The position numbers and the translations under genes were made by a program. Shown here one piece after another: positions 516 through 55,984 of a stretch of 64,000 nt of DNA; within the stretch, counting starts at the first letter, position 1, and every line of letters begins with the position of its first letter. The DNA is taken from the IMG/VR virus record IMGVR_UViG_3300020473_000013, positions 62,001 through 126,000 of that record; one strand, written 5' to 3'. Under the pieces are notes generated by a model, which made no database searches, was not told the origin of the DNA, and was given only the letters and a program-made list of their open reading frames with translations.

Positions 516-581
516 TAAACATCATCTATGACCGTTACCAACTTTAGTAACGGTCGCTCTGCTCTTACGACCAGTATATCA
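516..581 (-). promoter_or_regulatory. Promoter/leader cassette (divergent copy): TGaTATACT, 32 bp, TGGTAACGG-N7-TGATGTTTA
   Basis: Read directly; matches the 8-copy element; upstream of the hydrolase gene. Confidence 0.55.
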
Positions 582-592
582 CATCTTGGCGC

Positions 593-2125
593 CTAGTGCA
601 TGTCGCTTAGGGCTTCGATGAGGCTGCGCTTGAACTCGTCGTCTGGCACTGTGATGATGTCACCGAAGGAGGCGACAACAATGTTGGCGTATCGGTCGAA
701 GTCGATTCGACCTTGAAAGGACTCCTTGTCATACCCGTGAGCAATGTATCGGACAGCACGTTCTCCGTCCAACCTCTCCTTCAACATCACCTTACGCATA
801 CGTTTGAAGGTAGGGCTAGTTATCAGGTGTCGGTCTTGAATGTCGGACCAATAGTCGTGTGCGAACTTGCGCTCATCCGCAGTCAGCAAGGTCTCCGACT
901 GCCTTACGGAATCCCGAATCGCGGCATGGTCCTTGTCGGATAGTAGGCCAGCAAGCACCAGTATTGCGCCCATAAACCTATCGTAAGGTTGGTCAATGAT
1001 AGTTGTGCTAGTGTGGACAGCGGATTCCACCGAGCTGCGCACATCACCGTGAACTTGGCGCAGGTCCTCCTGCTTTGCGATCTTGATGTCTGACAGTATA
1101 GAATTTACAACTTTGTCATTCTTCGGGAACGCAAACAGGCGTTTGGATTTAGGTAGGGACTTTTTGGCCGTCAACCGATTGCCACGATATGCGTAAGAGC
1201 TGGTCGTCTTTCCGTAGGTATACCCCTGAACGGAAATGCGGTACCTGACTCGTATACTCTCCAGAAGCTCAGGGACCTGAGGCTTGAACGGGTGCGCCGA
1301 ATGAAGTATCACGTACCGATCCTGCGGCATTTCGACAAGGAGGACATACTCAGGTTGAGCGAGTGTCGCCTCCTTAATGTCGTTCTCCGTTACGTCAATG
1401 TTGTATCCAAACTTGTTAAGGCGGTGCATGTCTTCCAAGAACAGAGGACCGTGATCCGCGTTCGCGTACCTGCGGTCCTGATCCTCAAAGAGACGCTTGT
1501 GGTGCTTAATGTGGATCATTTCGTGGAGCACGATGGAACAGATGCGCGGTATATCCGTCAATGCTCGCTTGCTAATCCGCAGCTTGTATTCCACATTGAC
1601 GGGCGAATGAGCGCGAGTGACGGCTTGTCCAGAAAGACGAGTAGATTCCGACAACTGGACGGTGAGTTTTGACGGAAGCTCATTATCGAAATGGAGCTTG
1701 TTGAAGTAGTGATACAGGCGAAGGATGTCAGCCTTCTTAGGAGGCATCGGTATGCTTGGAAAGTATTTGGAAGGCTTAGCCTGAGGCTGTCCTTCGGGTA
1801 CGTGCGTGCGTGTCTTGCGCGCAGGCTTTTTCTTGTCCAAACCACCGACCCCAGGAGTCAGCTTCACACCACGAATGGTTGCCTTGTAGCCCGTCGAGCG
1901 ACGAACGACTTTAGCGACTTCCTTCTCCGTGAGGGTGAAGTTGACCTTGGGGTTGGTAATGTCGATCAGTTTGTACTGACCTCGATACTTCCGAATGCCG
2001 AATCGGTCGTTATACTGGAGCTCCAGATCATGTGTCCTATTATGATCGTTGAACTCCAGATGCTTTTTCGACTTGAACCTGTACCATTCGTATTTGTCCA
2101 ATGAGGCAGACAGTGACACGTACAT
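593..2125 (-). CDS. SprT-like zinc metalloprotease domain protein
   Basis: LYHYFNKLHFDNELP, IVLHEMIH (HExxH) and HGPLF motifs; N-terminal ~85 aa resemble those of ORF 9274..10071. Confidence 0.8.
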   Translation of the reverse strand: MYVSLSASLDKYEWYRFKSKKHLEFNDHNRTHDLELQYNDRFGIRKYRGQYKLIDITNPKVNFTLTEKEVAKVVRRSTGYKATIRGVKLTPGVGGLDKKKPARKTRTHVPEGQPQAKPSKYFPSIPMPPKKADILRLYHYFNKLHFDNELPSKLTVQLSESTRLSGQAVTRAHSPVNVEYKLRISKRALTDIPRICSIVLHEMIHIKHHKRLFEDQDRRYANADHGPLFLEDMHRLNKFGYNIDVTENDIKEATLAQPEYVLLVEMPQDRYVILHSAHPFKPQVPELLESIRVRYRISVQGYTYGKTTSSYAYRGNRLTAKKSLPKSKRLFAFPKNDKVVNSILSDIKIAKQEDLRQVHGDVRSSVESAVHTSTTIIDQPYDRFMGAILVLAGLLSDKDHAAIRDSVRQSETLLTADERKFAHDYWSDIQDRHLITSPTFKRMRKVMLKERLDGERAVRYIAHGYDKESFQGRIDFDRYANIVVASFGDIITVPDDEFKRSLIEALSDMH

Positions 2126-2137
2126 GGGTAGGTACCT

Positions 2138-2545
2138 TTAGAAGAAGACGATGTTGGCGAAGCCGGCCTGAGGACTGACGAACGTTACGGTGATGGTATT
2201 CTCCTCGATCACCAGATCATCGCACAGGATTTCCCGCATGTCAGTGTCCAACAAAGTGACGACTGCGTTAGTGCTGCCTTTCCCGTGTTCGATGGTCCAC
2301 GTAGCCGCAGGAGTGTTCGCTGCGAAGGAGTACCCGTTAGCGCCTCCGGAACCGGACGGAGCAGGGACGCTTGTGAGCTTCCCGTTTACCATCATCGGGA
2401 TATGACCTTCGGCTAAGCTCAAGCCTCCTAATTGACGAGGACCCGCACCACGGCGCAAGATGACGGACTCCTGCGGAACGTCTTCGGCCATGTACGGACG
2501 TTTGGGCAGCTCCAACTGGATGAAGTTTTCAAAGCTGTTAGCCAT
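2138..2545 (-). CDS. Putative virion structural protein
   Basis: Start moved to MANSFENF (RBS AGGAGAG); C-terminal TWTIEHGKG..AVVTLLD....NTITVTF..PQAGFA pattern seen in phage virion proteins. Confidence 0.55.
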   Translation of the reverse strand: MANSFENFIQLELPKRPYMAEDVPQESVILRRGAGPRQLGGLSLAEGHIPMMVNGKLTSVPAPSGSGGANGYSFAANTPAATWTIEHGKGSTNAVVTLLDTDMREILCDDLVIEENTITVTFVSPQAGFANIVFF

Positions 2546-2546
2546 G

Positions 2547-4586
2547 TCAGAGACTCTCCTCAATATCAACCTGGAGGGTGCCCGAGGTGTTGGCAGAGGC
2601 AAAGGCATCATCGCTCAACCAAAGATGCGTTCCACCCGACGGAGCGTAGTTGCCTTCGGAGTCAACGATGGAGTATGCGCCCACCGCATCCCGAGTATCG
2701 GTACGGAGTTCAAGCATGGAATCCGACCCGGTGTAGTTCGCGCTAGTGTTGATGGCATTGTACACTTCGACTCCGATAGGAGCCAGACGTGCGAATGCCG
2801 GGAACGTCACGGTGCGTAGCTCGAAGCCTGCCACAGCGTAGTCGCCCAGACCGCTAAAGTCCGTTGTCTCCAAATTGGCGATGTTGGTAGCGGAGAAGTT
2901 GGAGAGCGCAGCAGGGCCGCGGGCGTCAGAGTTGGTCACGCGCAGGGTACGCGCCCAGGTCACCGAGTCCATCTGCTCCCAGTCGTCTACCCAAGAGCCG
3001 ATCTCAGGGTCCAGAACAGGAGCGTTCTCGATAATCTGGTCGAACTCTACGATCACTGGATATTCTGAGCCTGTTTCAGACGTGGCAATATGCGGAATCT
3101 GATCGCCGGTCCCTACAGGAAGTCCGGGATTCTGGAACGACACCTGATGCGGAGCAATCACACCGCTGGAGTCCGTACGGTACACGTACCAGTCTACATC
3201 ATCCTTGCGAACAATGAGAGGACCATACGTATTACCCACAGACCCGTCCTCGGGCCATGTAGCGCCCTCCCAACCGCCGGAAATACCAGAGGAAAGATCG
3301 ACGAAAGACGCTTCGCCCAAGGCCGCAGGATACGCAAAGAACCCGTACATGGGATCAGGAGCTTCGAGCATGAAGTCTTGGTTGTCAGTGCTGTCGAACT
3401 GGTTGGTCAGAAGGTCGATGTCTTCCGCAGTCTCCACGCGGGTCTGGGCGAGCGCACCGAAGCGCGGGTAGTCTGACACCTCGCGGGTGTTCTTACCGAG
3501 AATGGAGCCGACGATCTCCACGCTAACGACGGATGCCGCAACGCTGGCAATTTTCAGATCATAGGTCTTCTCGACAAATGAACCATTGGCCGTGCGCGAA
3601 GCTGTCACAGTGACGCCGCCTTCGAGGCTGTACGCGCCTTGGGTGACTGTAAGGAGACGGGTATTAAGGACCTCCGTCTCACCTCCGCTAGCGTCTCCAT
3701 AGTCGAACGCAAAGGTCATCGCGTCCTGATTGGAGAACGTAACGTTGGCGGTCACGGTATCACCCATGCCGAGAGCGTCAGTGCCTGTGCTGTAGCCGGT
3801 AAACGTAACATCGATTGACGGGTACGTCTGGTCCAGCGTGAGAGCAGAGGTCTCAGCCGGAGCGCCGATAGTCCCTAGTTGGTTCACACCTGCCACACGG
3901 ATGGGAAAAGACCCTACCCGATCAGAGATAACGACTGTGCCGGAGAACGTGCGAAGACCTGCTCCTCCGCTGTCGGCCGCACCGAGGACGAAAGAACCAG
4001 ACTCTCCAGCACCAGAGCCAAGAACGATCAGGTCCACGGCGACATTATCGACAGTGCCGGACACCTGCACTTCGTCCCCTTGTTTCACTGAGGTCTGACC
4101 TGCAGGGGTACTGTCTATACTAATAGTGCCGGCAGGAGGACCTAGCGCATCTACGGTGATGTCGATAGTAGAGCTACCGCCAGCGGATGACGTTACCTCT
4201 ACCTCACCGCTAACAGCAAGGGAAACGTCGGCATAACCGTAGAACAGACGCCGATCGCCTTCGACCTCTTGCAGTTCGGCTTGTACGCCGTCCACCTGCA
4301 CGGTCGGGTTGTAGAATGAGGACCCGCCCTCTGCCAGAAAGTGGATACGCAGCTCCGCGGTATCACTTACACAACTCAAGAGAACTTGGTCGGCAGGGAT
4401 GGTATCCGCATATACGCGATTGCCGACGTTACCACTTCCGACAGGTTCCACACCTGTGATGAACACAGGACGAGCACCCGAAGTCGCAAGCGATTCAAGA
4501 TCGCCTAGACGCACAGGGTGCTGCGGATCAGTCGGAGAACGGGTCAGCTTTACCTCGCCCAGAATTTCAAGGTCATGTGCTTTCAC
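2547..4586 (-). CDS. Large beta-rich virion structural protein (Ig-like or fibre-associated)
   Basis: 679 aa, G/T/S/V/D-rich; GTG start with RBS GGAGG; adjacent to other structural genes. Confidence 0.55.
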   Translation of the reverse strand: MKAHDLEILGEVKLTRSPTDPQHPVRLGDLESLATSGARPVFITGVEPVGSGNVGNRVYADTIPADQVLLSCVSDTAELRIHFLAEGGSSFYNPTVQVDGVQAELQEVEGDRRLFYGYADVSLAVSGEVEVTSSAGGSSTIDITVDALGPPAGTISIDSTPAGQTSVKQGDEVQVSGTVDNVAVDLIVLGSGAGESGSFVLGAADSGGAGLRTFSGTVVISDRVGSFPIRVAGVNQLGTIGAPAETSALTLDQTYPSIDVTFTGYSTGTDALGMGDTVTANVTFSNQDAMTFAFDYGDASGGETEVLNTRLLTVTQGAYSLEGGVTVTASRTANGSFVEKTYDLKIASVAASVVSVEIVGSILGKNTREVSDYPRFGALAQTRVETAEDIDLLTNQFDSTDNQDFMLEAPDPMYGFFAYPAALGEASFVDLSSGISGGWEGATWPEDGSVGNTYGPLIVRKDDVDWYVYRTDSSGVIAPHQVSFQNPGLPVGTGDQIPHIATSETGSEYPVIVEFDQIIENAPVLDPEIGSWVDDWEQMDSVTWARTLRVTNSDARGPAALSNFSATNIANLETTDFSGLGDYAVAGFELRTVTFPAFARLAPIGVEVYNAINTSANYTGSDSMLELRTDTRDAVGAYSIVDSEGNYAPSGGTHLWLSDDAFASANTSGTLQVDIEESL

Positions 4587-4634: not shown

Positions 4635-4910
4635 CTAGGAAATTTCTAACGCATGGCGGAACAGATCGTTGTAGGTATCGCAAACAAGGACCTGCTCACC
4701 GTTGGTAACCGCAGCCTTCACGGCCGACTTGGCATTTTTGCACTTGTACCGATAATCGGCGTCGTGTTGGAGAGGCGCGAACATGGCTGAGTTCTTGGGG
4801 CCAGAAGCCAAGACATAAACATGCCTCTCGGTGACGAAAGCTACGATCCGACGTGAGATTTTCACTTCGTCCAGGTTGCTGCTTGTTAAATTAGTTACCA
4901 TTGGGAGCAC
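4635..4910 (-). CDS. Hypothetical protein
   Basis: ORF in operon, RBS AGGAG. Confidence 0.6.
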   Translation of the reverse strand: MLPMVTNLTSSNLDEVKISRRIVAFVTERHVYVLASGPKNSAMFAPLQHDADYRYKCKNAKSAVKAAVTNGEQVLVCDTYNDLFRHALEIS

Positions 4911-16352: not shown

Positions 16353-17186
16353 TTAGGAAACGTCTATCTCGCTCACGCCACCTTTCTGACGCTTGGTCGA
16401 GGTCTTCTTGGCCTTCTTCTTTTTCTTCTTGCTGCCGGAGACCTCGTAACCACTTTCGATTGCACTGACAATGCTGACCAGATCGTTGGGGCCTGAGGCC
16501 TTAGACTTTTTCACCTTGTTGGACTTGAAGACCTTGTCGATGGTGGGAATTTCACCCACGTCGATCTGATCGGTAAGCCCAAGCTCGTACTCCTCCAGGC
16601 AACGAAGGTGCTTGCTCACATGCTTCTGGACATCAGGGTCCGTGTACCTAGCCTTCTTGATCATCCGTTCGCGGATAGGCTCGAACTGCTCGTCGGTGTG
16701 GACGGCCTCTCGTGCCTTTCCTGCGAAAGTCATGGTCAACTTACCATCACGACTGGTGACACGGATGACATCACGATCTGCGTACATGATGTACGCGGAC
16801 ATGAAGTTGGACAGGTAGTTGGAACGAGCCAAGCCCCTGTACCGAACATACACTTTCATGCCCATCTGGAAACCAGCGGCGCGTGTCTGTTTCTCGCGCA
16901 TGATCAAGGCACCGAGCTTACGCAACTGGTTATCATCGACGGAGGCGACCATACGGCTAATGCCGATGAAGGTTTCCTCGTCCTCGACGATAGATGACAA
17001 CTCGTTGGTGTTGGGCACAAACTGCTGGCACGGCTTTTGTGATTCGATGACTCCGCGTTCAGAGCACAGCTTTTTATCCCGTACTATCTCGCAATCGAAA
17101 CCGACGCAATCACCACAGGTCGGACGTTGATTTTTTAGGGAGTCTACGACCTTTGCTTCGATTTGGTTCTTCATGGTGCCCATCAA
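16353..17186 (-). CDS. Hypothetical protein with Cys-rich N-terminus and Lys-rich tail
   Basis: CGDC..C...C...C cluster. Confidence 0.65.
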   Translation of the reverse strand: MMGTMKNQIEAKVVDSLKNQRPTCGDCVGFDCEIVRDKKLCSERGVIESQKPCQQFVPNTNELSSIVEDEETFIGISRMVASVDDNQLRKLGALIMREKQTRAAGFQMGMKVYVRYRGLARSNYLSNFMSAYIMYADRDVIRVTSRDGKLTMTFAGKAREAVHTDEQFEPIRERMIKKARYTDPDVQKHVSKHLRCLEEYELGLTDQIDVGEIPTIDKVFKSNKVKKSKASGPNDLVSIVSAIESGYEVSGSKKKKKKAKKTSTKRQKGGVSEIDVS

Positions 17187-17622
17187 TCAATCCCCTAGCT
17201 TTGAGCGTTTCCGCTATACAATACAAAACGGTATCCTGCAGATTGGTCACGCCGTCCAAGTCCTGCTTCAGGAGCTTGAGGGCTTTGTGCATCTGTCCCG
17301 GAACCTCAACATGTAGTTTGTATCCTTTATCATCCCCTTCAACGGGAGGATTCAGGATAGCATCAACCAGAATACTCAGATACGGCTGCGCCCGCTCCGC
17401 GTTCTCTGGTGAACTCCAGTACCGACGGCGTATGGGCCTGCCGGTACGTACTTTGGCAACGACGGCCTCGGCGTGCGCGTGAAGCACATTGTGGCAGTCG
17501 GAGCATAGAGGTATCTGTAAGCTGTCTTGTCCTCCCAAGGCTTGGGGCACGGTATGGTGCCAGTGTAACAGGGAAAAGTATTCGGTGCAAATCGAACAGT
17601 GCCCGCTCTTGTACTTCTCCAT
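17110..17622 (-). CDS. HNH endonuclease family protein
   Basis: CSIC...HWHHTVP.ALGG......LCSDCHNVLH. Confidence 0.8.
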   Translation of the reverse strand: MEKYKSGHCSICTEYFSLLHWHHTVPQALGGQDSLQIPLCSDCHNVLHAHAEAVVAKVRTGRPIRRRYWSSPENAERAQPYLSILVDAILNPPVEGDDKGYKLHVEVPGQMHKALKLLKQDLDGVTNLQDTVLYCIAETLKARGLIDGHHEEPNRSKGRRLPKKSTSDLW

Positions 17623-21593: not shown

Positions 21594-21778
21594 TGATTAT
21601 CTCCTTTACGCTCATCGAGAAATACTTGACCGCAGGTGCAGGAGATATGGTGCTCTCCTGTACTCAGGGTAACTGACATGATCTGGTGGGGTGTGCGTAG
21701 GAAAATCTCGTGTGTACGCACCAGACCGTGAATGTTTGCGCGGAAGCTCGCCTTGAATCGTTGACCCAGCTTATTCAT
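21590..21778 (-). CDS. Hypothetical protein (HxxCxC motif)
   Basis: Overlapping start/stop packing. Confidence 0.5.
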   Translation of the reverse strand: MNKLGQRFKASFRANIHGLVRTHEIFLRTPHQIMSVTLSTGEHHISCTCGQVFLDERKGDNQ

Positions 21779-23122: not shown

Positions 23123-23197
23123 TGAACCTGAGCAATCACCGTTACCACGTTTGTATGTGCTCGCTCAGGTTTTCGTTGCTACACGTCTATTATATCA
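23123..23197 (-). promoter_or_regulatory. Promoter/leader cassette: TGaTATAAT, 41 bp, TGGTAACGG-N7-TCAGGTTCA
   Basis: Read directly; also a 9-bp stem AACCTGAGC/GCTCAGGTT. Confidence 0.75.
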
Positions 23198-23626
23198 CGA
23201 TTTGCCGATGACCAAAACGGGCAGCTTGCGCATTTCGCTCCCCAGATACCGCTTTAGCGTCTTGTCTTCCACGTCGATGTCGCGCTCGCCTTTCCAGAAG
23301 ATGCGGTACGAGTCTGATCCGTAGCGACCAATACCCGGCAGCACCGTCGCGTCCTCTCCGTCCCACGATAGAAACGCGTGGCTCAAACTTTTCAGGCAGC
23401 GCGCTCGCATTTCGTGCAGCCCGCACGGCTGGATGATGCGCTCAATGTCGCGGACGTTGGCGTTCGCCATTGCTTGAGCATCGGGAAACATCACCAGCAA
23501 CTTCGGTAAGACTTGCCTCACCTGAACGTGGGAGGTCTGGTTGAGGAGTACGACTGCAACCATGTGCTCCCACGGTGTATCGCAGTGTTCCTGGACAAGC
23601 TGCTCTTTGGTCATCGGCAGTTTCAT
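23195..23626 (-). CDS. HhH-GPD DNA glycosylase, MBD4-like catalytic domain
   Basis: PWEHMVAVVLLNQT...V..VL.KL...FP.......A....I..II.P.GL...RA, LPGIGRYGSDSYRIF. Confidence 0.8.
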   Translation of the reverse strand: MKLPMTKEQLVQEHCDTPWEHMVAVVLLNQTSHVQVRQVLPKLLVMFPDAQAMANANVRDIERIIQPCGLHEMRARCLKSLSHAFLSWDGEDATVLPGIGRYGSDSYRIFWKGERDIDVEDKTLKRYLGSEMRKLPVLVIGKS

Positions 23627-29794: not shown

Positions 29795-29804
29795 TGCTGC
29801 TCTC

Positions 29805-32430: not shown

Positions 32431-32440
32431 GGTGTTGTCC

Positions 32441-40744: not shown

Positions 40745-41260
40745 TTATACCAGTGCAGCGTCCTTGAGCTTCTTCATAGGACGAACCTTGATCTTGGTGG
40801 TGGCGGGCTTCGGCTTGGTGACGATCTCCTTGCCAAAGGACATCTTCGTTTCGCCGCCTTTCTTGGCCGGAATGTGCTTGGTCACGACCTTGAGCAGTCC
40901 CGGAATCATGAACTCGCCGAGACCCTTCTTGCGGATGGACGCGAGCATGGTAGTCTCCAGAGCTTCCATGACCTTCTTGACATCCTTCTTGTCGAGTTCG
41001 GTCTCGTCAGCCAGATGCTGGATGAGCTGAGTCTTGGTCAGCTTCTCCTTCATCGGCTTCGGCAGGTGAGAGGTATCCGGCTTGGCCGCCTTGCCTTTCT
41101 TCGTGCTACCCTTCTTCGCGGAAGCCTTGGCTTTGGTAGCCTTGGTAGCCTTCGAGGCCTTCTTCTCAGACGCCTTGGTCTTGGCAGTCTTCTTGGTGGT
41201 CTTCACGTCCTCGTCCTTCTTGGAACGAGTCTTCTTGGTCTTGGTGGTCTTGGTAGCCAT
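40745..41260 (-). CDS. HU/IHF-family DNA-binding protein with Lys/Thr/Ala-rich N-terminal extension
   Basis: LTKTQLIQHLAD.TEL.KKDV..V..AL.......I......F.IPGL.K......PA..G.......I..K.KPA...IK.RP.K.LKDA. Confidence 0.88.
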   Translation of the reverse strand: MATKTTKTKKTRSKKDEDVKTTKKTAKTKASEKKASKATKATKAKASAKKGSTKKGKAAKPDTSHLPKPMKEKLTKTQLIQHLADETELDKKDVKKVMEALETTMLASIRKKGLGEFMIPGLLKVVTKHIPAKKGGETKMSFGKEIVTKPKPATTKIKVRPMKKLKDAALV

Positions 41261-41769: not shown

Positions 41770-43323
41770 TCAGAGTTCGTCGTCGAAGTCGTCGAAGTCG
41801 TCGTCCTCTTCATCTTCCTCAGAGTCCTCGTCCTCGTCGTCCTCGTCGTCCTCTTCATCTTCCTCAGAGTCATCGTCATCCTCTTCGGAATCGTCGTCCT
41901 CGTCATCCTCCTCAGAGTCATCGTCGTCCTCTTCGGTGTCTTCGAGGTCGTCTTCGTCGTCCTCTTCCTCGTCGAAGTCTTCCTCCTCATCGTCGTCGGA
42001 GTCGTCTTCTTCGGAATCGTCGTCCTCTTCCTCGTCGTCGAAGTCTTCCTCGTCCTCGCCTTCATCACCTTCATCGCTGTCGGCGTCTTCGGGCTCCGGC
42101 TCCTCGTCGTCGAGAATCTCCATGCGGACGACCTTGGCAACGGACACCAGCTTCACGGACTCGCTGTCTGTCAGGTAAAGCATAATCTTGGACTTAGCGT
42201 CGGAGAAGCCGATGACAATAGCTTCCTCTCCCTCGTAGTCCAGCTTGGTGCCGATCTCCACTTCGTCCCCGAGCTTGGGCTCGATGACGGACTCAAAGTT
42301 TGCATCCCAGGCCGCGGTGATTTTCTCCAGCTTGGAATCGCTAACGACGCTTTCGTCCACGAAGTTGCGCAGCATGTCGATGCGAGTCTCGCCACTCGAA
42401 CCCTTGTCGGAGGAGGTGGCCTTCTGCTCGGCGTCCTCCATGTCGGCAGCGTAAGCCTCGATGTCCTCATCGGAAGCGTTAGTCGGGAGCAGGCCGATCT
42501 GCATAGTCAGGCGCTCGTCATTGAACACACCGCCAACGCAAGCTACGGTGAAGTTGTGCCCAGTAGACTTGCGAATGAAGTCGGACACATGCTCACCCAG
42601 AGCAGCCTCGACGGAGCGCGCCAGCTCCTCAGTGATGGACTTGACCGGCTTGGCTTTCACGCTGCCAGATTTCTTGGTCGACTTCTTGCTCTTGGCCGGA
42701 GCTTCTTCCTTCTGAGCAGCAGCCTTCTTACCGCGGCGCGGGACCTTGCTACCTTTCTCGCTAGCGTCTTCGCTGGACTTCTTACCGCGACGCTGACGCT
42801 TCGGCTTGGCTTCTTCCTGCTCAGCCTTCTTGGAGCTGGACTTCTTGGAGCTGGCAGACTTTCCGGTGCTCTTGCCTGTAGACTTCTTACCGGAAGTCTT
42901 CTTGGTGCCTTTCTTGCCGATGTTGTCGACCATCTCGCGGAGTTCGTCGATGCCTACGCCTTTGGCATCGGCACGGACCCGGAAGACTTCGGCGTTGACC
43001 AGTTCAGATACGAGTTCACGACGGCCCATGTTAGCGCTGTTGGTTGCTTTCTTTGCCACGGTGGATGTTCCTTTTTCAGATTGCTTGGAAGTGTTGGACC
43101 CGCGCTTGCGAGTAGTGGAGCTGGTCTTCGGGGTTGCGCCGCTGCCGTCGCCGTCGAGTTCGACGAGGCCGCGTCCCTTCTTACCGATGTTGCTGGGTTT
43201 GATCTTGGTGCCGCCTTCCGTCTTGTAACCAGTCTTCATCACCTTGACGATACGCTCTTTGGTACCGTCCAGGAGGGTGATGCGCTTGCCTTCGAAGGTC
43301 GGGTCGGTTTTGGTGACAGCCAT
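41770..43323 (-). CDS. Large charge-segregated protein (Lys/Ser-rich half, folded middle, poly-D/E tail)
   Basis: RBS AGGAG; ends DDFDDFDDEL; preceded by a promoter cassette. Confidence 0.8.
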   Translation of the reverse strand: MAVTKTDPTFEGKRITLLDGTKERIVKVMKTGYKTEGGTKIKPSNIGKKGRGLVELDGDGSGATPKTSSTTRKRGSNTSKQSEKGTSTVAKKATNSANMGRRELVSELVNAEVFRVRADAKGVGIDELREMVDNIGKKGTKKTSGKKSTGKSTGKSASSKKSSSKKAEQEEAKPKRQRRGKKSSEDASEKGSKVPRRGKKAAAQKEEAPAKSKKSTKKSGSVKAKPVKSITEELARSVEAALGEHVSDFIRKSTGHNFTVACVGGVFNDERLTMQIGLLPTNASDEDIEAYAADMEDAEQKATSSDKGSSGETRIDMLRNFVDESVVSDSKLEKITAAWDANFESVIEPKLGDEVEIGTKLDYEGEEAIVIGFSDAKSKIMLYLTDSESVKLVSVAKVVRMEILDDEEPEPEDADSDEGDEGEDEEDFDDEEEDDDSEEDDSDDDEEEDFDEEEDDEDDLEDTEEDDDDSEEDDEDDDSEEDDDDSEEDEEDDEDDEDEDSEEDEEDDDFDDFDDEL

Positions 43324-43375: not shown

Positions 43376-43450
43376 CGAGCCTTATCAACTGCCGTAACCA
43401 AATTGCTTTGAGCTGGCTCTGGCTTTCGCTACCACATCTTCATTATATCA
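43376..43450 (-). promoter_or_regulatory. Promoter/leader cassette: TTGCAC...TGaTATAAT, 41 bp, TGGTTACGG-N7-TAAGGCTCG
   Basis: Read directly. Confidence 0.75.
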
Positions 43451-43661: not shown

Positions 43662-44429
43662 TTACAGTTTGATCAGGTGGTCGGCAACGATCAGCGCCGA
43701 CTTGCGAAATTCAGGCTTCGTCTCCACGCTACAGGAGAGGGCCTCAAACTTTCTGTGGTGCTGGGGACCGAACGTCTGCCACATGCGGGCGGCGTTATAC
43801 GGCTCACCAACGTCGCGAGCTACGGTAAGGCGTTCGCCCCGCTCCTGTGTACGGGTTAGCTCGATCACCCGCCCATGCTCACCTACTTGGGAGTCCAGTA
43901 TGGTCTCGAACACGGTCAGGCTAACGCGGATATAGTTGAGCCTGCTCTTGTCCTTCATCAGGATAACGGGGACGTCCACGTAGATGCGGCTGACAGGATG
44001 ATCGACCGTCAGGTAGTACGAATCCAAGCGCAGGGGTAACATTACGCCTGGGCGAATCGGGTGTGGGAACCAGCGAATCAGGTGCGCGAAGTATTGGCGC
44101 AAGTTCGCCTTATCTACCAGAGGGTAGAACGCATTTCCTACAGACTTCGATGGTCTGCCTCCAAACGCAGGCTCGAAAAGGAAGGGCCGTGGAGGGCACT
44201 CGATGTTTGGACTATCCAGCGATGCGATGTGAAATCCGTCAGTGGTGAACGCTGGCTTCACCTTACGCGCTTCCATTTCCTTAAGTAGGGTGTGCGCGGC
44301 ACCTTGGGATTGTGTGACGCCTTCAAGATCGTCAAAGATCGACTGCATTTCCTCAAACGATACAAACTTCCTTAGAACGTCCAGGCCGGCGTCTGCGATG
44401 GTGCGTTCAATCTCTCTGGAGATACTCAT
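43662..44429 (-). CDS. Hypothetical protein
   Basis: Start moved to MSISRE. Confidence 0.6.
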   Translation of the reverse strand: MSISREIERTIADAGLDVLRKFVSFEEMQSIFDDLEGVTQSQGAAHTLLKEMEARKVKPAFTTDGFHIASLDSPNIECPPRPFLFEPAFGGRPSKSVGNAFYPLVDKANLRQYFAHLIRWFPHPIRPGVMLPLRLDSYYLTVDHPVSRIYVDVPVILMKDKSRLNYIRVSLTVFETILDSQVGEHGRVIELTRTQERGERLTVARDVGEPYNAARMWQTFGPQHHRKFEALSCSVETKPEFRKSALIVADHLIKL

Positions 44430-44484
44430 GTGTTTCACCCGAAGTCTGGAAGACGGCGCCCGGATTGACGCCGCCTGTGCTGAC

Positions 44485-44769
44485 TTACAAAGAGGGCCGC
44501 TGCGTATCCGGTTGGACCCTAAGATGGCTGTGACGGTTGGGCATAGGGAATTGAATTGACCCCAATACACACTCAACGGTATGGATCGCAATCGAACGAG
44601 TGGCTCCTGTCATGGGGCACCAAACGTCGAGCATCTGGTCTCTGTTGCCCGTAATGTTTACCGACGTTAGGTTAAGTTCGACGGAGTCAGGTATCCCTCT
44701 AATATTCCTGACTTGCAACCATTTGCCCGCAATGAGGCGCTCGTTCTTGCTCGGCAAAGACTCGACCAT
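44485..44769 (-). CDS. Hypothetical protein
   Basis: ATG immediately after upstream stop. Confidence 0.45.
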   Translation of the reverse strand: MVESLPSKNERLIAGKWLQVRNIRGIPDSVELNLTSVNITGNRDQMLDVWCPMTGATRSIAIHTVECVLGSIQFPMPNRHSHLRVQPDTQRPSL

Positions 44770-44770: not shown

Positions 44771-45358
44771 TCAGCTCTCCTGAGTATTGCGTCGGGGGTC
44801 GGACAATTCTTCCGGGCGTGTTTTATCCGAGAACAACTGACGTTCCATGTCGGAGTAAAGACGCTCCTTGCGAGCCTGAACAGAAAGCTCCAGTTGGCAA
44901 AGTTCGCGATAGTTCATCATACCAACGAGGCGTTCGGCCATTTCGTTCTTGTGCTTGTCCAGCTTCTCATACGCGGAAGTGTTCTCCGCGTTGCGGCGCA
45001 TATTCTCCACATCTGGAATGTCTGTGCGGATCGCCATGCCTACACGGTACCCGTATGCTGCGCGTCCCGTGCTGCAACGCGGGCTGATACGCTTGGTGGT
45101 ACGACGCACCTGATCGAGATTGCGCGAGTAAGAGGTGCTGAGTGCGAGCGACGTTGCGGCGATTACCTCGTTGAGGTCGTCGCGGTCGATCGTGGTCAGG
45201 TCAACGCCGAGCGCGGTAATCATGCGGCTAGCCACGTCGGTGGCGGTAAAGAAAGCGGCGTTGTCGCACGCTACCATGGAACCAAGTGTGGACACGGCGC
45301 GAGCGCGAATGCGGTCGAACAGAGGAGCGAGACGTTGATCTTTAACGCGGTTTGTCAT
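44771..45358 (-). CDS. Hypothetical protein
   Basis: RBS GGAG. Confidence 0.65.
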   Translation of the reverse strand: MTNRVKDQRLAPLFDRIRARAVSTLGSMVACDNAAFFTATDVASRMITALGVDLTTIDRDDLNEVIAATSLALSTSYSRNLDQVRRTTKRISPRCSTGRAAYGYRVGMAIRTDIPDVENMRRNAENTSAYEKLDKHKNEMAERLVGMMNYRELCQLELSVQARKERLYSDMERQLFSDKTRPEELSDPRRNTQES

Positions 45359-45424: not shown

Positions 45425-45724
45425 CTAGCCGTAAGCGAAACGGTAGCGCTGGCCTTCCTTCTCAAGGGTGATGCCCCGTATCAGGGGACCGAAAGAATCA
45501 CCCTCGATGGTGAACCAGCCGGCTACTGGCTCGTAGCCGTTCTGGCGGAAGATCGGAAGAACCTCTTCCTCCCACTCATCGTAGTCCTTGGTCAACGGAG
45601 GAAGGCCGTTACGCTGGCGCGCCTCGTTGATGTAGGACCGGGCGCTCGGGGTCATGCAGAACCCAGCCTCCTCAGAGGTGGTAAGGCCCGGAACGTCGTC
45701 GATGCCGATTTCCTGAATGCTCAT
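45425..45724 (-). CDS. Hypothetical protein
   Basis: RBS GGGAG after a cassette. Confidence 0.65.
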   Translation of the reverse strand: MSIQEIGIDDVPGLTTSEEAGFCMTPSARSYINEARQRNGLPPLTKDYDEWEEEVLPIFRQNGYEPVAGWFTIEGDSFGPLIRGITLEKEGQRYRFAYG

Positions 45725-45747
45725 GCGCTGATTCTCCCGTCGATTGT

Positions 45748-45822
45748 TGAACCTGAACAGTAGCCGTTACCACATTGTTTCGAGCTGGCTCAGGTCTTCG
45801 CTGCCACAACTTCATTATATCA
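45748..45822 (-). promoter_or_regulatory. Promoter/leader cassette: TGaTATAAT, 41 bp, TGGTAACGG-N7-TCAGGTTCA
   Basis: Read directly; 32 bp (45764-45795) identical to 46265-46296. Confidence 0.8.
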
Positions 45823-45847
45823 AAATTCGGCGATCAGCGCACGGTCT

Positions 45848-46222
45848 TTATTCTGTGCGGCTGCGCACTTTCTTGGCAAAGTTTGCGTCGGGCGTCAACT
45901 CAGCCAAGCGCTTGAGGAGCGCAACGATGTTCGGGTAGTCGCGCCAAGAGGTGCGAGGAGAATCAAACATCAGGTCGAGACTTCCTACCAACTTCTCGGT
46001 ACCTTGCTTGTCTAGGCGGAAGGTCTCGATGTTTAGGCGCCTTCCAGATTTACAAGGTACCGAGTTAAACTCCACCGCGGTGTCAGGAGCCAAGTAGACT
46101 ACGCTGACCATGTCTTCGTTATCCACGTCCTCCAGTTCAAACTTTTCAGCTCCGATCGACTGGAGCCCAAGCTGCATTGCTCCGAAGGCGGTGTTGCGAG
46201 TGTCTGCGTTCTTATCGGTCAT
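45848..46222 (-). CDS. Hypothetical protein flanked by direct-repeat cassettes
   Basis: Start MTDKNA (RBS GAGG). Confidence 0.65.
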   Translation of the reverse strand: MTDKNADTRNTAFGAMQLGLQSIGAEKFELEDVDNEDMVSVVYLAPDTAVEFNSVPCKSGRRLNIETFRLDKQGTEKLVGSLDLMFDSPRTSWRDYPNIVALLKRLAELTPDANFAKKVRSRTE

Positions 46223-46248
46223 GCTTTCGTTCCTCGTGTGCGTGAATG

Positions 46249-46323
46249 CGAGGCTTAACAATCTCCGTTACCACATTGTTTCGAGCTGGCTCAGGTTCTT
46301 GCTGCCTCACGTTCATTATAACA
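46249..46323 (-). promoter_or_regulatory. Promoter/leader cassette: TGtTATAAT, 41 bp, TGGTAACGG-N7-TAAGCCTCG
   Basis: Read directly. Confidence 0.8.
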
Positions 46324-46799: not shown

Positions 46800-47040
46800 A
46801 GCCTCGGCGGATCAGGTCGTCGAGGGTCACGTTAAAAACCATGTGATCAGGAATCGACGCGATCACATGGGCGTTATTCCAATGAGAAGACGGGAACGGA
46901 AGCGGACGGCACAGTTGATATTGCACATACAGGAAGAAGTGCGGGTACTCTGCCGCGTGGTAGTTCTCAATGTCTCCAGGTACCTCAACGCCGGCATTCT
47001 CTGCAGGCGCTTTGAGCATTTGGACGGAACAGATCATCAA
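46792..47040 (-). CDS. Hypothetical protein
   Basis: ATGA overlap with upstream gene. Confidence 0.55.
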   Translation of the reverse strand: MMICSVQMLKAPAENAGVEVPGDIENYHAAEYPHFFLYVQYQLCRPLPFPSSHWNNAHVIASIPDHMVFNVTLDDLIRRGFE

Positions 47041-47303
47041 TCGTCCTCCATCAAGTCCTCTTCCTCAGCGACCTTGATTGCCTTATCGAGCACCTTGCGG
47101 AACTTGCGGAGTTCCTGAACGGGAATGACCATACCTTTCGCGGTAGGCGCAAACTTTTCCATGCTCTCCTTCTTGTACCACTGCCGTACGTCTAACACAG
47201 CGCGACCGTCGTCAAACTCTTGCAAGATGGCACGAGTTTCGGTGCCTTTGCGACGATTGAGGCGGCCGATCTTGTGCGTCTTTTTCGGTTGCTTGAAAGC
47301 CAT
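47037..47303 (-). CDS. PC4/YdbC-like ssDNA-binding protein
   Basis: LQEFDDGRAVLDVRQWY......APTAKGMVIP..EL..F matches the PC4 fold signature. Confidence 0.8.
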   Translation of the reverse strand: MAFKQPKKTHKIGRLNRRKGTETRAILQEFDDGRAVLDVRQWYKKESMEKFAPTAKGMVIPVQELRKFRKVLDKAIKVAEEEDLMEDD

Positions 47304-48722: not shown

Positions 48723-48787
48723 TGAACCTTACTTACGTCCGTAACCACATTAGTGTGGGATCGTTCTCCCACATCTTCATTATAGCA
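48723..48787 (-). promoter_or_regulatory. Promoter/leader cassette: TGcTATAAT, 31 bp, TGGTTACGG-N7-TAAGGTTCA
   Basis: Read directly; 5' hairpin GTGGGA/TCCCAC. Confidence 0.75.
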
Positions 48788-51732: not shown

Positions 51733-51734
51733 GA

Positions 51735-54850: not shown

Positions 54851-54857
54851 GATGATC

Positions 54858-54903
54858 TCCCAGATACATAGCTTCGATATTCTAAATTAGTATGTATCTA
54901 GGA
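54858..54903 (-). promoter_or_regulatory. RBS-sequestering hairpin of the HNH gene
   Basis: 13-bp stem TCCTAGATACATA/TATGTATCTGGGA (one G-U) covering GGGA of the SD before the GTG at 54850. Confidence 0.65.
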
Positions 54904-54910
54904 TTTGTAC

Positions 54911-55018
54911 CTAGGCAAGTCCTTCCATAATCTCGAAGCCGTCCTGCCGTGCAGACTTCTTGCGTTTTTTCTTCGGGGCGGAAGACACGTCCACCTCGGT
55001 CACCTTCTTCTTTGCCAT
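54911..55018 (-). pseudogene. Stranded 5' fragment of gyrB (35 aa)
   Basis: MAKKKVTEVDVSSAPKKKRKKSARQDGFEIMEGLA* aligns with GyrB MARKGVKEVDVTSGKKGKKKSFAQDSFAILENL; has own RBS GGAGG and GTGTAAATA (55052-55060). Confidence 0.8.
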
Positions 55019-55077
55019 GATCGTGTAGCCTGTGTTGGAGGTATCAGTGACTATTTACACAATACCTTCTCGGTACA

Positions 55078-55106
55078 ATAAACAAAGACGGGGGCCGGAG
55101 CCCCCA
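55078..55106 (-). terminator. Rho-independent terminator
   Basis: GGGGGC-TCCG-GCCCCC then GTCTTTGTTT. Confidence 0.65.
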
Positions 55107-55112
55107 TCGGAT

Positions 55113-55427
55113 TCAAACTTTTTCGATGCCATCGAAGTACATGGTCAGCAATTCCTCTGCGCCGACCATATAATGGTATTCAAGATACCGACGCAAGACT
55201 TCTTCCTCACCATAAAGGGTGATGTTAGAGTTGCCTCCCGCGGGACCGATAAACTCGTTCATTTCCAGACCGATACCATGACTGAGGAGAATATCGTAAA
55301 GCTCTTTGGCGTCAGCGTTGGACAGGTCGAACGACCCATCTTCTGCCATGCCGTCCACAGCGAAGTCGATATCGGAAAGTTTGCACGGGCCGCGAACGTC
55401 GAGAGTAGCGAAAGTCATGTTGGTCAC
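55113..55427 (-). CDS. Hypothetical protein
   Basis: ORF with RBS AAGG. Confidence 0.6.
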   Translation of the reverse strand: MTNMTFATLDVRGPCKLSDIDFAVDGMAEDGSFDLSNADAKELYDILLSHGIGLEMNEFIGPAGGNSNITLYGEEEVLRRYLEYHYMVGAEELLTMYFDGIEKV

Positions 55428-55491
55428 CTTGTAGATCGTGTTGGAAGTCGGAGATAAAGATGGAGGGCCCGAAGACCCTCCCTGCCGTCAG

Positions 55492-55863
55492 TTACTCGCA
55501 GTACGTCTTGAGAAGTTCGACGAAGTTGGCGAGCGTTTCGTCAGGCAAGCCTCTCTGGTCATAAGCGTTGAACCATTGCTCAGCCAGCTCGCCAAACTTT
55601 TTGTTGACGACTTCCTCAGATTCCTCGTCCAGAATGAACGGGTCGATCGAGGTGCCCGTCTGCTTTGCAATGTCAGGGAAGATCACATCCTCCACAAACT
55701 CTCGGATGAAGCGGTACGCGGCTTTGGGCGCTTCGCCCGTGCAGATGATCTTACTATCCGAAAGGGCCAGCGCGATGATGGCCGGTTCTTTGTAGGCATC
55801 CCCTTCGAGCAGGGCGAACAGATTTTCTCGGGTAGCAAACTTTTGATTAGGGAAACGCGGCAT
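55492..55863 (-). CDS. Hypothetical protein
   Basis: Start moved to MPRFPN (RBS AAGGA) downstream of a cassette. Confidence 0.6.
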   Translation of the reverse strand: MPRFPNQKFATRENLFALLEGDAYKEPAIIALALSDSKIICTGEAPKAAYRFIREFVEDVIFPDIAKQTGTSIDPFILDEESEEVVNKKFGELAEQWFNAYDQRGLPDETLANFVELLKTYCE

Positions 55864-55909
55864 GATGTGATTCCTTACAGTGAGCGCGATTGCGCTAGTT
55901 GAATGATGG

Positions 55910-55984
55910 CGAACGTTATCAATCTCCGTCACCACATTGTCGAACGCTCGTTTCGGATCGCTAGCGTTCATCTTCATTATATCA
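55910..55984 (-). promoter_or_regulatory. Promoter/leader cassette: TGaTATAAT, 41 bp, TGGTGACGG-N7-TAACGTTCG
   Basis: Read directly. Confidence 0.75.

What the first reader, a model, noticed from the sequence alone, without database searches (positions are those of the whole stretch)
516..55984. Eight-copy promoter-leader cassette with a helically phased bipartite motif
Seen in sequence: on the minus strand an extended -10 (TGnTATAAT; TATACT in one copy) is followed by TGGTNACGG-N7-TNAGGTTCR, then an RBS. The first half is near-invariant, the second degenerate in some copies. Copies: 516-581, 23123-23197, 24521-24595, 43376-43450, 45748-45822, 46249-46323, 48723-48787, 55910-55984. The -10 to TGG distance is exactly 41 bp in six copies and 31 and 32 bp in the other two, about one helical turn less. 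The intervening sequence varies and forms a 5' hairpin in at least some copies. Established: T4-type phages carry mobile early promoter/stem-loop (PeSL) cassettes, and phages use nut/put-type leaders for antitermination. Inference: this is a phage regulon site, either a DNA operator on the same helix face as RNA polymerase (early-gene switch), a tandem phage-specific promoter, or an RNA antitermination element. I do not recognise the motif.
Basis: partly seen in the sequence, partly recalled or inferred. Interest (0 to 1): 0.85.

Follow-up and report, generated by a model that had tools for sequence, protein, structure and literature searches.

The report
Jumbo-phage promoter cassette with repeated 9-mer
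Eight copies of a host-type promoter followed by a conserved, twice-repeated 9-base motif head the variable gene modules of a PaBG-like jumbo phage; the unit is conserved across the clade, including the cultured Pseudomonas phage PaBG, and is probably the docking site of an unknown regulator.

Summary
Eight minus-strand cassettes sit at the stated coordinates. Each has TGnTATAAT (TATACT in one), then 41 nt (six copies) or 31/32 nt, then TGGTNACGG-N7-TNAnGTT. A weight matrix scores them 31-42 bits, and nothing else in the window exceeds 12.

The window is part of a 225-kb PaBG-like jumbo myovirus contig. The same cassette occurs in five other metagenomic lineages and in the isolate PaBG, at orthologous positions: after UvsX, before topoisomerase II.

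- The helical phasing disappears. Across 26 copies the spacings are 29, 31-35 and 39-41.
- The "second half" looks like a degenerate direct repeat of the first 9-mer, 13 nt downstream.
- The cassettes head gene modules that have no PaBG homologue. These modules lie between conserved core genes, and two of them swapped order between two phages. That is PeSL-like behaviour.

No Rfam family matches, no consensus RNA fold is predicted, and covariation is weak. PaBG also has mirrored copies on the far side of three shared -10 boxes.

My best reading is a sequence-specific operator just downstream of the start site, bound by a clade-specific protein. I slightly favour action on DNA (0.35) over RNA (0.30). 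A tandem phage promoter is unlikely, because a separate TGTAAATA late-type motif exists.

The parts
517..581 (-). Cassette c1. TGATATACT (573-581), 32 nt, TGGTAACGG (532-540), then a weak second repeat ending at 517. It heads a SleB-type cell-wall hydrolase gene (3-500).
   Evidence: (31 bits). An inverted 9-mer (TAGTAACGG on the + strand, 545-553) forms an 11-bp hairpin with the motif. Its GTTAC core also lies 13 nt upstream of the main core.
23124..23197 (-). Cassette c2. TGATATAAT (23189-23197; its TGA is the stop codon of the upstream gene), 41 nt, TGGTAACGG (23139-23147), second repeat ending at 23124. It heads ORF 22436-23089 and then an MgtC-family gene.
   Evidence: (37.8 bits). Its leader shares AGCACATACAA and TGCTsAGG with a leader of Erwinia phage pEa_SNUABM_40.
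24522..24595 (-). Cassette c3, directly after UvsX and an intrinsic-terminator-like hairpin (GGGCGC-TTCG-GCGCCC-T5). TGCTATAAT, 41 nt, TGGTTACGG (24537-24545).
   Evidence: 38 bits. Cassettes sit at the same position after UvsX in R (L106 11594), T (L171) and PaBG (81297). The 5' hairpin is GUAGC/GCUAC.
43377..43450 (-). Cassette c4. TGATATAAT, 41 nt, TGGTTACGG (43392-43400), second repeat TAAGGCTC. It heads the 517-aa ORF 41770-43323.
   Evidence: (37.7 bits). The orthologous cassette is Q2 (L350), between homologues of 43662-44591 and 41770-43323.
45749..45822 (-). Cassette c5. TGATATAAT, 41 nt, TGGTAACGG (45764-45772), TCAGGTTC. It heads ORFs 45425-45724, 44771-45358 and 43662-44591.
   Evidence: 36.1 bits. 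This module keeps its own cassette but sits in a different order in relative R.
46250..46323 (-). Cassette c6. TGTTATAAT, 41 nt, TGGTAACGG (46265-46273), TAAGCCTC. It heads ORF 45848-46234.
   Evidence: (37.4 bits). The leader is paralogous to those of c4 and c5.
48724..48787 (-). Cassette c7. A 16-bp terminator-like hairpin (48858-48822), then TGCTATAAT, 31 nt, TGGTTACGG (48739-48747), TAAGGTTC, and a ribosome-binding site 4 nt later. It heads a six-gene module that includes a PC4-like gene (47037-47303).
   Evidence: (37.3 bits). The 5' hairpin has z = -5.0.
55911..55984 (-). Cassette c8. TGATATAAT, 41 nt, TGGTGACGG (55926-55934), TAACGTTC. It heads three non-conserved ORFs upstream of the topoisomerase II large subunit.
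   Evidence: 42.4 bits. Cassettes sit at the same position in PaBG (108805, before gp150 through topoisomerase II) and in Q1 (L348). The 5' hairpin has z = -2.4.

Best explanation
Each cassette is a host sigma-70 extended -10 promoter with no conserved -35. It drives a module of accessory genes.

About 22-35 nt into the transcribed region it carries a sequence-defined, asymmetric operator. This operator is two head-to-tail 9-mers: TGGTNACGG, and 13 nt later [T/A]GnTnA[C/G]GT.

I propose that a protein encoded by this phage clade binds these repeats on the DNA and stops or holds RNA polymerase just after promoter escape. All accessory modules would then be switched off, or gated, together as infection proceeds. 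This would work like the orientation-specific 'stoperators' of mycobacteriophage L5.

The near-identical cassettes also act as homology patches through which modules are shuffled, as with T4-type PeSLs.

Shown here: the anatomy, the conservation, the one-to-one link between promoter and motif, the link to variable modules, and the shuffling.

Inferred: that transcription starts after the TATAAT box, that a protein binds, that it binds DNA rather than RNA, and that the effect is repression.
For: - Motif tied to the promoter: 7 of 8 exact TGNTATAAT sites in the window carry it. In the complete PaBG genome all 4 matches to TGnTA[TC]A[AC]T carry it 32-34 nt downstream. A weight matrix adds five weaker sense copies.
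- Deep conservation of sequence, not of context: the motif survives at orthologous sites (after UvsX, before topoisomerase II) in phages whose core proteins are only 52-61% identical and whose G+C runs from 39 to 56%. The leader around it is replaced.
- Recognised as sequence: all four bases occur at the central N, which argues against pairing with a fixed RNA. RNAalifold predicts 0 pairs. A permutation test for an enclosing helix gives p = 0.20.
- The core GTNAC is palindromic with a free centre.
- Head-to-tail repeat: self-identity of the five core positions peaks at offset 13 (0.80, against about 0.2-0.3 at most other offsets; 0.59 at offset 19). PaBG P4 repeats GGTTACG exactly at +13. Contig T has four GTWACG cores at a 13-nt period.
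- Mirrored copies in PaBG: three lie on the other strand, on the far side of the same -10 box and at the same distance (33/33, 34/34, 34/33 nt). No gene is served there. This is easy to explain for DNA sites guarding both directions of a symmetric -10 box, and harder for an mRNA element.
- The distance to the -10 is tight within each genome, while the distance to the ribosome-binding site runs from 0 to about 45 nt.
Against: - No binding protein has been identified. The genes next to the cassettes have no DNA-binding domain hits.
- Every primary copy is transcribed and in the sense orientation, which fits an RNA site equally well.
- In five or six of the nine PaBG sense cassettes the second repeat (GAGG) serves as the Shine-Dalgarno sequence. 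That points to control of translation.
- Two small candidate helices show weak covariation. For AGCN/NGUU, 2 of 500 shuffles reach the observed score. For GGNN/NGUU, 15 of 500 do, with position 10 against position 19 giving GC in 7 sequences and CG in 5.
- A 13-bp period puts successive sites on different faces of B-DNA.
- The copies are homologous, so their shared orientation and spacing are partly inherited rather than independent evidence.
- The repeat reading rests on one consensus comparison plus a few exact cases.
Confidence: 0.35

Rival explanations
1. RNA-level operator. The tandem 9-mers are read in the 5' untranslated leader by a phage RNA-binding protein, as with T4 RegA acting on many early mRNAs. 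This protein would control translation or stability of the first gene of every module.
For: - All primary copies lie in the sense orientation inside the predicted leader.
- In PaBG the second repeat is the Shine-Dalgarno sequence, or abuts it, in most cassettes.
- c7 and c1 have the ribosome-binding site 4 nt after the motif.
- There are weak covariation signals.
- The first 9-mer is predicted to be somewhat more paired than in flank-shuffled controls (0.32 against 0.41, p = 0.02).
- One mirrored PaBG copy (20713) would give a short leader-only RNA ending at a terminator hairpin, which could act as a decoy.
Against: - In the window and in R the motif lies up to about 45 nt from the ribosome-binding site.
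- R, T and Q changed the second repeat to AACGTT, which is not Shine-Dalgarno-like, yet kept the motif.
- There is no consensus structure and the minimum-free-energy folds disagree between copies.
- The mirrored PaBG copies would need functional antisense RNAs.
Confidence: 0.3
2. Loading site for an elongation or antitermination factor, in the manner of lambda nut, HK022 put or RfaH ops/JUMPStart. The element would modify RNA polymerase early in the leader so that foreign-looking accessory modules are read through terminators or Rho.
For: - The element sits close to the promoter at the head of multi-gene accessory modules and is orientation-specific.
- G1-G2-T3-N4-A5-C6 could form an ops-like mini-hairpin in the non-template strand (a G-C pair, a G.A pair and a two-base loop). 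This is my inference from the published ops structure and was not tested.
- The start of the c4 leader contains GGTAGCG, the ops core.
Against: - No Rfam match at gathering or permissive thresholds.
- No boxB-type or put-type conserved hairpins.
- The ops consensus GGCGGTAGnnTG is not met.
- No NusG-like gene was seen among the roughly 50 window ORFs scanned.
- No obvious internal terminators were examined within the modules.
Confidence: 0.12
3. No trans-acting factor. The conserved leader is just the homology core of a mobile or recombining promoter cassette (PeSL-like). It is kept uniform by gene conversion, and the ancestral second repeat was simply the ribosome-binding region.
For: - Module order is swapped between the source phage and R, with each module keeping its own cassette. 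The R2 and R3 leaders are identical over about 100 nt.
- The c2, c4, c5 and c6 leaders are clearly paralogous.
- Alexandravirus phages share the extended -10 promoter and leader style without the 9-mer.
Against: Gene conversion explains uniformity within a genome. It does not explain why the same 9-mer survives in at least seven lineages while the rest of each leader is replaced, even at orthologous sites: c3, R6, T1 and P3 share little beyond the -10 box and the motif.
Confidence: 0.1
4. Tandem second promoter. The bipartite motif would be the recognition site of the phage's own sigma factor (ORF 27988-29577) or of sigma-54.
For: - The phage encodes a sigma-70-family protein.
- TGG...TTGC in c2 and c3 loosely resembles the sigma-54 -24/-12 elements.
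Against: - The motif never occurs without the upstream -10 box.
- The two blocks are 10 bp apart, too close for -35/-10 elements.
- The GG to GC spacing is one base too long for sigma-54, and TTG is not conserved.
- Separate motifs mark the other gene classes: TGTAAATA, and possibly TTGTATAG.
Confidence: 0.04
5. Transcription-primed replication origins of the T4 oriF/oriG type: a promoter followed by a conserved downstream block where the transcript forms an R-loop primer.
For: - The phage has T4-like recombination and replication genes: UvsX, a gp32-like single-strand binding protein and topoisomerase II in the window, and a UvsW-like helicase in PaBG.
- There are several co-oriented copies, one of them next to uvsX.
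Against: - The leaders are not A+T-rich unwinding elements.
- Every copy is followed by a ribosome-binding site and a gene.
- G-richness is not marked.
Confidence: 0.03

Closest known systems
PeSL cassettes of T4-type phages (Arbiol et al. 2010, PMC2839356; Comeau et al. 2014, PMC4122927)
   Same: - Small composite regulatory units with a host-type early promoter, sometimes directly after a terminator stem-loop.
- Repeated many times in the variable regions between conserved core genes.
- Act as exchange points for module shuffling.
   Different: - A different phage lineage (PaBG-like jumbo phages), and I found no sequence relation.
- The conserved part here lies downstream of the promoter, in the leader, and is a specific tandem 9-mer.
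- A terminator stem-loop is seen at only two of the eight copies.
Stoperators of mycobacteriophage L5 and cluster A phages
   Same: - A short asymmetric site present in many copies.
- Located in short intergenic spaces, in one orientation relative to transcription, downstream of promoters.
- Proposed here to act on the elongating polymerase.
   Different: - L5 sites are single 13-bp sites bound by the lysogeny repressor of a temperate phage.
- Here the sites are doubled 9-mers tied one-to-one to a promoter in phages with no lysogeny signs seen.
- Binding and blocking are untested here.
Lambda nut, HK022 put, and RfaH ops/JUMPStart leader elements
   Same: A conserved cis element early in the leader of long or accessory operons, specific to one orientation.
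   Different: No boxB or put hairpins, no match to the boxA or ops consensus, no Rfam hit, and no cognate factor identified.
T4 RegA translational operators
   Same: One regulator, many early or middle mRNAs, with the site at or near the ribosome-binding region (as in the PaBG cassettes).
   Different: RegA sites are A/U-rich, poorly conserved and overlap the start codon. This motif is G/C-containing, strongly conserved and often far from the start codon.
T4 lysozyme, soc and gene 49 'promoter inside a hairpin' control (from my own knowledge)
   Same: In four PaBG cassettes an inverted copy upstream of the promoter can pair with the motif, and with the Shine-Dalgarno sequence, in read-through RNA. 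The predicted arm-to-arm duplexes are -13 to -28.5 kcal/mol. Transcripts starting at the cassette promoter would lack the upstream arm.
   Different: Seen only in PaBG, not in this window. The arms keep the motif's conserved positions rather than covarying at the free positions, so pairing may be a by-product.

Membership tests
PeSL-type mobile promoter/terminator cassette | Host sigma-70 early-type promoter in each copy | tested here: met
   TGnTATAAT is present in 7 copies and TGATATACT in 1. The consensus scan finds only weak -35 boxes, at c4 and c7. This is sequence evidence only; no start sites were mapped.
PeSL-type mobile promoter/terminator cassette | Adjacent stem-loop or terminator forming a composite unit | tested here: inconclusive
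   Clear terminator-like hairpins lie directly upstream of c3 and c7 only. c2 overlaps the stop codon of the upstream gene.
PeSL-type mobile promoter/terminator cassette | Copies lie in variable regions and flank non-conserved ORFs between core genes | tested here: met
   By tblastn of the window ORFs against PaBG, none of the first genes after c2-c8 has a PaBG homologue (the c1 gene also gave no hit), while the flanking core genes do.
PeSL-type mobile promoter/terminator cassette | Evidence of exchange or shuffling at the cassettes | tested here: met
   The modules [45848] and [45425-43662] are in opposite order in R (L150), and each keeps its own cassette. The R2 and R3 leaders are identical.
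L5-type stoperator | Asymmetric short site, many copies, one orientation relative to transcription | tested here: met
   The 9-mer is asymmetric outside its GTNAC core. All sense copies follow their promoter in the same orientation. The PaBG mirrored copies face the opposite direction from a shared -10 box.
L5-type stoperator | Bound by a phage repressor that blocks elongation | not testable with these tools
   This needs protein-DNA binding and in vitro transcription assays.
nut/put antitermination RNA | Conserved hairpin(s) (boxB, or the two put stem-loops), with or without boxA | tested here: not met
   RNAalifold predicts 0 pairs on 21 anchored copies. The minimum-free-energy folds differ between copies. 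No Rfam match.
RfaH ops/JUMPStart | ops consensus GGCGGTAGnnTG in the leader | tested here: not met
   By my own inspection of the consensus, the motif shares only GGT-A...CG with ops.
Sigma-54 promoter | GG-N10-GC spacing with conserved TGGCAC and TTGC | tested here: not met
   The spacing is one base too long, and TTG(C) is absent from c1, c5, c7 and many relatives.
Any curated RNA family (Rfam 15) | Covariance-model match | tested here: not met
   No hit at gathering thresholds in the whole window. Permissive searches of the c5/c6 region and of L150 gave only chance-level hits.

The most novel reading that the evidence does not exclude
The tandem 9-mers are the RNA binding sites of a phage-encoded global post-transcriptional regulator, making a Csr-like circuit carried by a virus. 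The short divergent leader-only transcripts seen as mirrored copies in PaBG would act as decoy RNAs that titrate it. A related unexcluded reading is an ops-like mini-hairpin in the non-template strand that recruits an elongation factor protecting accessory modules from Rho.
Probability: 0.08. Interest if true: 0.85.

Novelty: new variant of a known kind. Interest (0 to 1): 0.6.

Why it matters
Gene regulation in jumbo phages that rely on the host polymerase is almost uncharted. The PaBG genome paper does not describe promoters.

This cassette defines a small, sharply bounded regulon: 8 copies in this window and 9 sense copies in PaBG. It controls exactly the fast-changing accessory genes. Its motif has been conserved across phages whose G+C differs by 17 points, which points to an unidentified regulator inherited with the clade.

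The same units appear to be the joints at which gene modules are exchanged. That extends the PeSL idea from T4-type phages to a distant jumbo-phage group.

Because PaBG is a cultured phage of P. aeruginosa PAO1, the DNA-or-RNA question and the identity of the factor can be tested directly.

Tried and rejected
- Known RNA family: Rfam at gathering thresholds on the whole window and at permissive thresholds on two cassette regions gave nothing. ARAGORN found no tRNA or tmRNA.
- Conserved RNA fold: single-sequence folds gave z-scores from -3.0 to +0.3 and different shapes. RNAalifold gave 0 pairs.
- Helices seen by eye: I thought I saw helices flanking the motif (CAAU/AUUG, AGCGC/GCGCU and others). 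A cross-copy permutation test gave p = 0.20, so I dropped them.
- Two small helices that both use NGUU show only weak covariation, and I treat them as inconclusive.
- Pairing with a fixed RNA (rRNA, tRNA 3' end, small RNA): rejected because all four bases occur at the central N, and no complementary copy exists on the + strand of the window apart from c1's own inverted arm.
- Sigma-54 and -35/-10 readings: rejected on spacing.
BLAST of cassettes against isolated phages found only the shared promoter start in Erwinia and Dickeya phages, plus PaBG itself. No bacterial genome carries the cassette.
- Locus V1 (the L346 and L367 loci, the same 65.8-kb contig, binned to a Tolypothrix MAG) shows no homology to the phage and is probably a chance match.
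- L370 has clustered TGTAACCA repeats but is an unrelated phage.
- Pfam and PHROGs scans of about 50 window ORFs found no obvious regulator next to the cassettes.


Full report

Yes. TGGTNACGG occurs exactly ten times on the minus strand and never on the plus strand. The other two (28223, 57189) lie in coding sequence without a promoter, which fits the roughly one chance hit expected per strand.

The bipartite pattern with up to two mismatches gives 9 hits against 1.06 expected, and 8 of them are the cassettes. A weight matrix built from the copies scores the eight at 31-42 bits. Nothing else on either strand exceeds 12 bits.

Seven of the eight exact TGNTATAAT sites on the minus strand carry the motif, and c1 has TGATATACT. 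The distance from the -10 box to TGG is 41 nt in six copies, 31 nt in c7 and 32 nt in c1. All copies sit in intergenic spacers in front of a ribosome-binding site and start codon.

**2. Where the window comes from**

All genes are on the minus strand. PHROGs and Pfam identify a terminase, a portal, a tail sheath, a DnaB-like helicase, a UvsX-like recombinase, a gp32-like single-strand binding protein, two topoisomerase II subunits and a sigma-70-family protein.

The closest isolate is Pseudomonas jumbo phage PaBG, with 52% identity in the terminase and 54% in UvsX. Gene order matches PaBG positions 61-115 kb.

The window is positions 62001-126000 of IMG/VR contig 3300020473_000013, which is 224,853 bp long. 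I call this phage S.

**3. The cassette in relatives**

Pattern and protein searches found the same unit in:
- R, contig 3300011934_000017 (220 kb, UvsX 83% identical): six copies;
- T, contig 3300036762_000065 (241 kb, G+C 39%): one cassette whose 26-nt motif unit is duplicated in tandem;
- Q, two contigs from JGI1221J13441;
- U, Ga0209788_1023562;
- X, three contigs close to PaBG;
- PaBG itself.

In the complete PaBG genome there are only four matches to TGnTA[TC]A[AC]T. All four are on one strand, and all four have the motif 32-34 nt downstream. The weight matrix adds five weaker sense copies, with -10 boxes such as GATAAT and TAAACT.

Cassettes occupy orthologous positions:
- after UvsX: c3, R6, T1 and P3;
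- before topoisomerase II: c8, Q1 and P4;
- after the gp144 homologue: c7, R1 and P1;
- c4 and Q2.

At these sites the leader between the -10 box and the motif is completely different in each phage, but the motif is kept.

Lu11 and the Erwinia Alexandravirus phage pEa_SNUABM_40 lack the motif in the regions I fetched. The Erwinia phage has the same style of extended -10 promoter with short, hairpin-starting leaders, but no 9-mer. No bacterial genome carries the cassette.

**4. What the motif is**

Across 21 copies the invariant or nearly invariant positions are T0 G1 G2 T3. A5 C6 G7 G8 ... T12 W13 G14. T16. A18 S19 G20 T21 T22.

Positions 13-21 read [T/A]GnTnA[C/G]GT, which is the first 9-mer again. 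Self-identity of the five core positions peaks at offset 13. It is 0.80 there, about 0.2-0.3 at most other offsets, and 0.59 at offset 19. PaBG P4 repeats GGTTACG exactly at +13. T has four GTWACG cores at a 13-nt period. R1 and c1 have a third core at -11.

I therefore read the "bipartite motif" as two head-to-tail copies of one asymmetric 9-mer whose core, GTNAC, is palindromic with a free centre. This rests on one consensus comparison plus those exact cases, so I call it probable rather than proven.

A third, weaker block, (G)AGC, lies at -15 to -12 in 13 of 22 copies.

The c2 leader shares AGCACATACAA and TGCTsAGG with an Erwinia phage leader. This suggests that the first 9-mer sits in an extra segment of about 12 nt, added upstream of an ancestral ribosome-binding region.

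**5. Helical phasing**

It does not hold. Over 26 copies the spacings are 29, 31, 32, 32, 33, 33, 34x3, 35x3, 39x5, 40x3 and 41x6. Spacing is tight within a genome and drifts between genomes.

**6. RNA structure**

- A strong hairpin at the 5' end is present in c3, c7, c8 and most PaBG copies. It is absent from the paralogous c2, c4, c5 and c6 leaders and from the R-type leaders.
- Minimum-free-energy folds around the motif differ from copy to copy.
- RNAalifold predicts no pair on the anchored alignment.
- A permutation test for a helix enclosing both repeats gives p = 0.20.
- Two short alternative helices that both use NGUU (positions 19-22) show weak signals. AGCN/NGUU is 77% paired against 72% in shuffles, and 2 of 500 shuffles reach its covariation score. 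GGNN/NGUU is 81% against 75%, with 15 of 500.
- The signal comes mainly from position 19, which is C in R, T, Q and c8 and G elsewhere. This looks like one or two lineage events, so I treat it as inconclusive.
- All four bases occur at the central N, which argues against pairing with a fixed partner RNA.

**7. Genomic role**

The first genes after cassettes c2-c8 have no PaBG homologue, and the c1 gene also gave no hit. The genes flanking these islands are conserved.

Between the gp144 and gp128 homologues both phages have about 9 kb of unrelated genes, and the cassettes are the only shared sequence there.

Between S and R, two cassette-bounded modules have swapped order, each with its own cassette. 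R2 and R3 have identical leaders.

c3 and c7 directly follow terminator-like hairpins.

This is the behaviour described for PeSL cassettes in T4-type phages (PMC2839356, PMC4122927), here in an unrelated lineage and with a conserved element downstream of the promoter.

**8. Mirrored copies in PaBG**

Four extra motif copies lie on the opposite strand.

Three are back-to-back with P2, P4 and P7. They sit on the far side of the same -10 box, whose reverse complement gives a weak -10 (CATTAT, CAGTAT, CAGTTT). The spacing is the same on both sides: 34/34, 33/33 and 34/33 nt. No gene lies downstream of these copies.

The fourth copy, at 20713, has a leader-like start (ATGTAGCG) and runs into a bidirectional terminator hairpin.

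In read-through RNA the inverted copy pairs with the motif, with predicted arm-to-arm duplex energies of -13 to -28.5 kcal/mol. However, the arms keep the motif's conserved positions rather than covarying at the free ones.

The window has no such copies, apart from c1's adjacent inverted 9-mer.

**9. Mechanism**

The evidence points to an element recognised by its sequence. It is tied to a promoter, specific to one orientation, and inherited with the clade across hosts of very different G+C. That implies a trans-acting factor, probably encoded by the phage.

| Question | Evidence |
|---|---|
| For action on DNA | Palindromic core with a free centre; mirrored copies at equal distance from a shared -10 box; tight spacing to the promoter but loose spacing to the ribosome-binding site; no conserved fold |
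| For action on RNA | Every primary copy is transcribed in the sense orientation; the second repeat doubles as the Shine-Dalgarno sequence in PaBG; weak covariation |

I commit, with modest confidence (0.35), to a DNA operator that holds or blocks polymerase just after promoter escape, in the manner of L5 stoperators. An RNA operator is close behind at 0.30.

Antitermination, a passive recombination core, a tandem promoter and R-loop origins are less likely, for the reasons given under the rival explanations.

**10. Novelty**

Nothing matching this motif was found in Rfam. The two literature searches I ran on PaBG transcription, and the PaBG genome paper itself, returned nothing on this element; the motif sequence itself was not searched for in papers. 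The kind of element, a repeated promoter cassette at the joints of variable modules, is known from T4-type phages. The conserved tandem 9-mer in the leader, its clade-wide conservation and the mirrored arrangement in PaBG are new.

Noticed in passing
window 9258, 20090, 37440, 41305, 43659, 53812, 55052, 58644, 61113 (minus strand); 58672 (plus strand): TGTAAATA occurs 10 times against 0.38 expected. Most of the nine minus-strand copies listed lie in spacers upstream of genes, including the portal gene and the HU-like gene. This is probably the late promoter, an analogue of T4 TATAAATA. The Lu11 GenBank record annotates CTGTAAAT as a 'putative middle/late promoter'.
   Followed up: partly
window 17214-17221, 26204-26211, 27958-27965 (minus strand): TTGTATAG occurs three times against 0.58 expected. 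All three are just upstream of genes: UvsX, the single-strand binding protein and ORF 16353-17186. This may be a third (middle) promoter class.
   Followed up: no
PaBG NC_022096.1, + strand 108877, 98475, 4484 and 20713 (loci L358, L356, L362, L361): Mirrored motif copies lie on the opposite strand. Three share a -10 box with a sense cassette at equal spacing. One would give a short leader-only RNA ending at a terminator hairpin. In read-through RNA they pair with the motif and the Shine-Dalgarno sequence.
   Followed up: partly
window 45425-46323, compared with L150 2300-6100: Two cassette-bounded modules are in opposite order in the source phage and in relative R. Two R cassettes (L150 minus-strand positions 2072 and 5292) have identical leaders over about 100 nt. 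This suggests recent exchange at the cassettes.
   Followed up: partly
window 47037-47303, 40745-41260, 21771-22439, 23195-23626, 56022-56606 and 3-500 (all minus strand): Accessory genes of note:
- a PC4-like single-strand DNA-binding protein;
- an HU/IHF-like protein behind a TGTAAATA box;
- an MgtC-family protein;
- an HhH-GPD glycosylase;
- a staphylococcal-nuclease-like protein;
- a SleB-type cell-wall hydrolase, driven by cassette c1 rather than by a late-type motif.
   Followed up: no
window 27988-29577 (minus strand): The sigma-70-family protein is 529 aa. Only residues 190-522 match the phage sigma family profile (341 positions); PaBG's sigma gene gp118 is 1,017 bp. The roughly 190-aa N-terminal extension is unexplained and could be a fusion with the PaBG gp119 equivalent.
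   Followed up: no
L171 minus-strand positions 4725-4860 (contig T): The 26-nt motif unit is duplicated in tandem, giving four GTWACG cores at a 13-nt period. A second TATAAT box follows directly.
   Followed up: no
L355 (Erwinia phage pEa_SNUABM_40) 9691, 14151, 20003, 28847, 32267, 37295: Alexandravirus phages use the same extended -10 promoters (TGnTAYAMT) with short leaders that begin with a hairpin. Two of these leaders share ACAACTAAnGCTGAGGAGC. One shares an 11-mer with the c2 leader, which suggests a common ancestry of the leader without the 9-mer.
   Followed up: partly
L370 minus-strand positions 2830-3080 (IMGVR_UViG_3300028833_000315): An unrelated phage has eight GGTTAC/GTAACC hexamers arranged in tandem pairs (TGTAACCA) inside an A+T-rich spacer. 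This looks like an iteron or operator array and was picked up by chance.
   Followed up: no
window 54851-55112, 32370-32807, 29578-29804 and 2126-2546: Several long 'gaps' in my greedy ORF map contain plausible unlisted small ORFs with their own ribosome-binding sites, for example ATGGCAAAGAAGAAGGTG... within 54851-55112. The gene map used here is therefore approximate.
   Followed up: no
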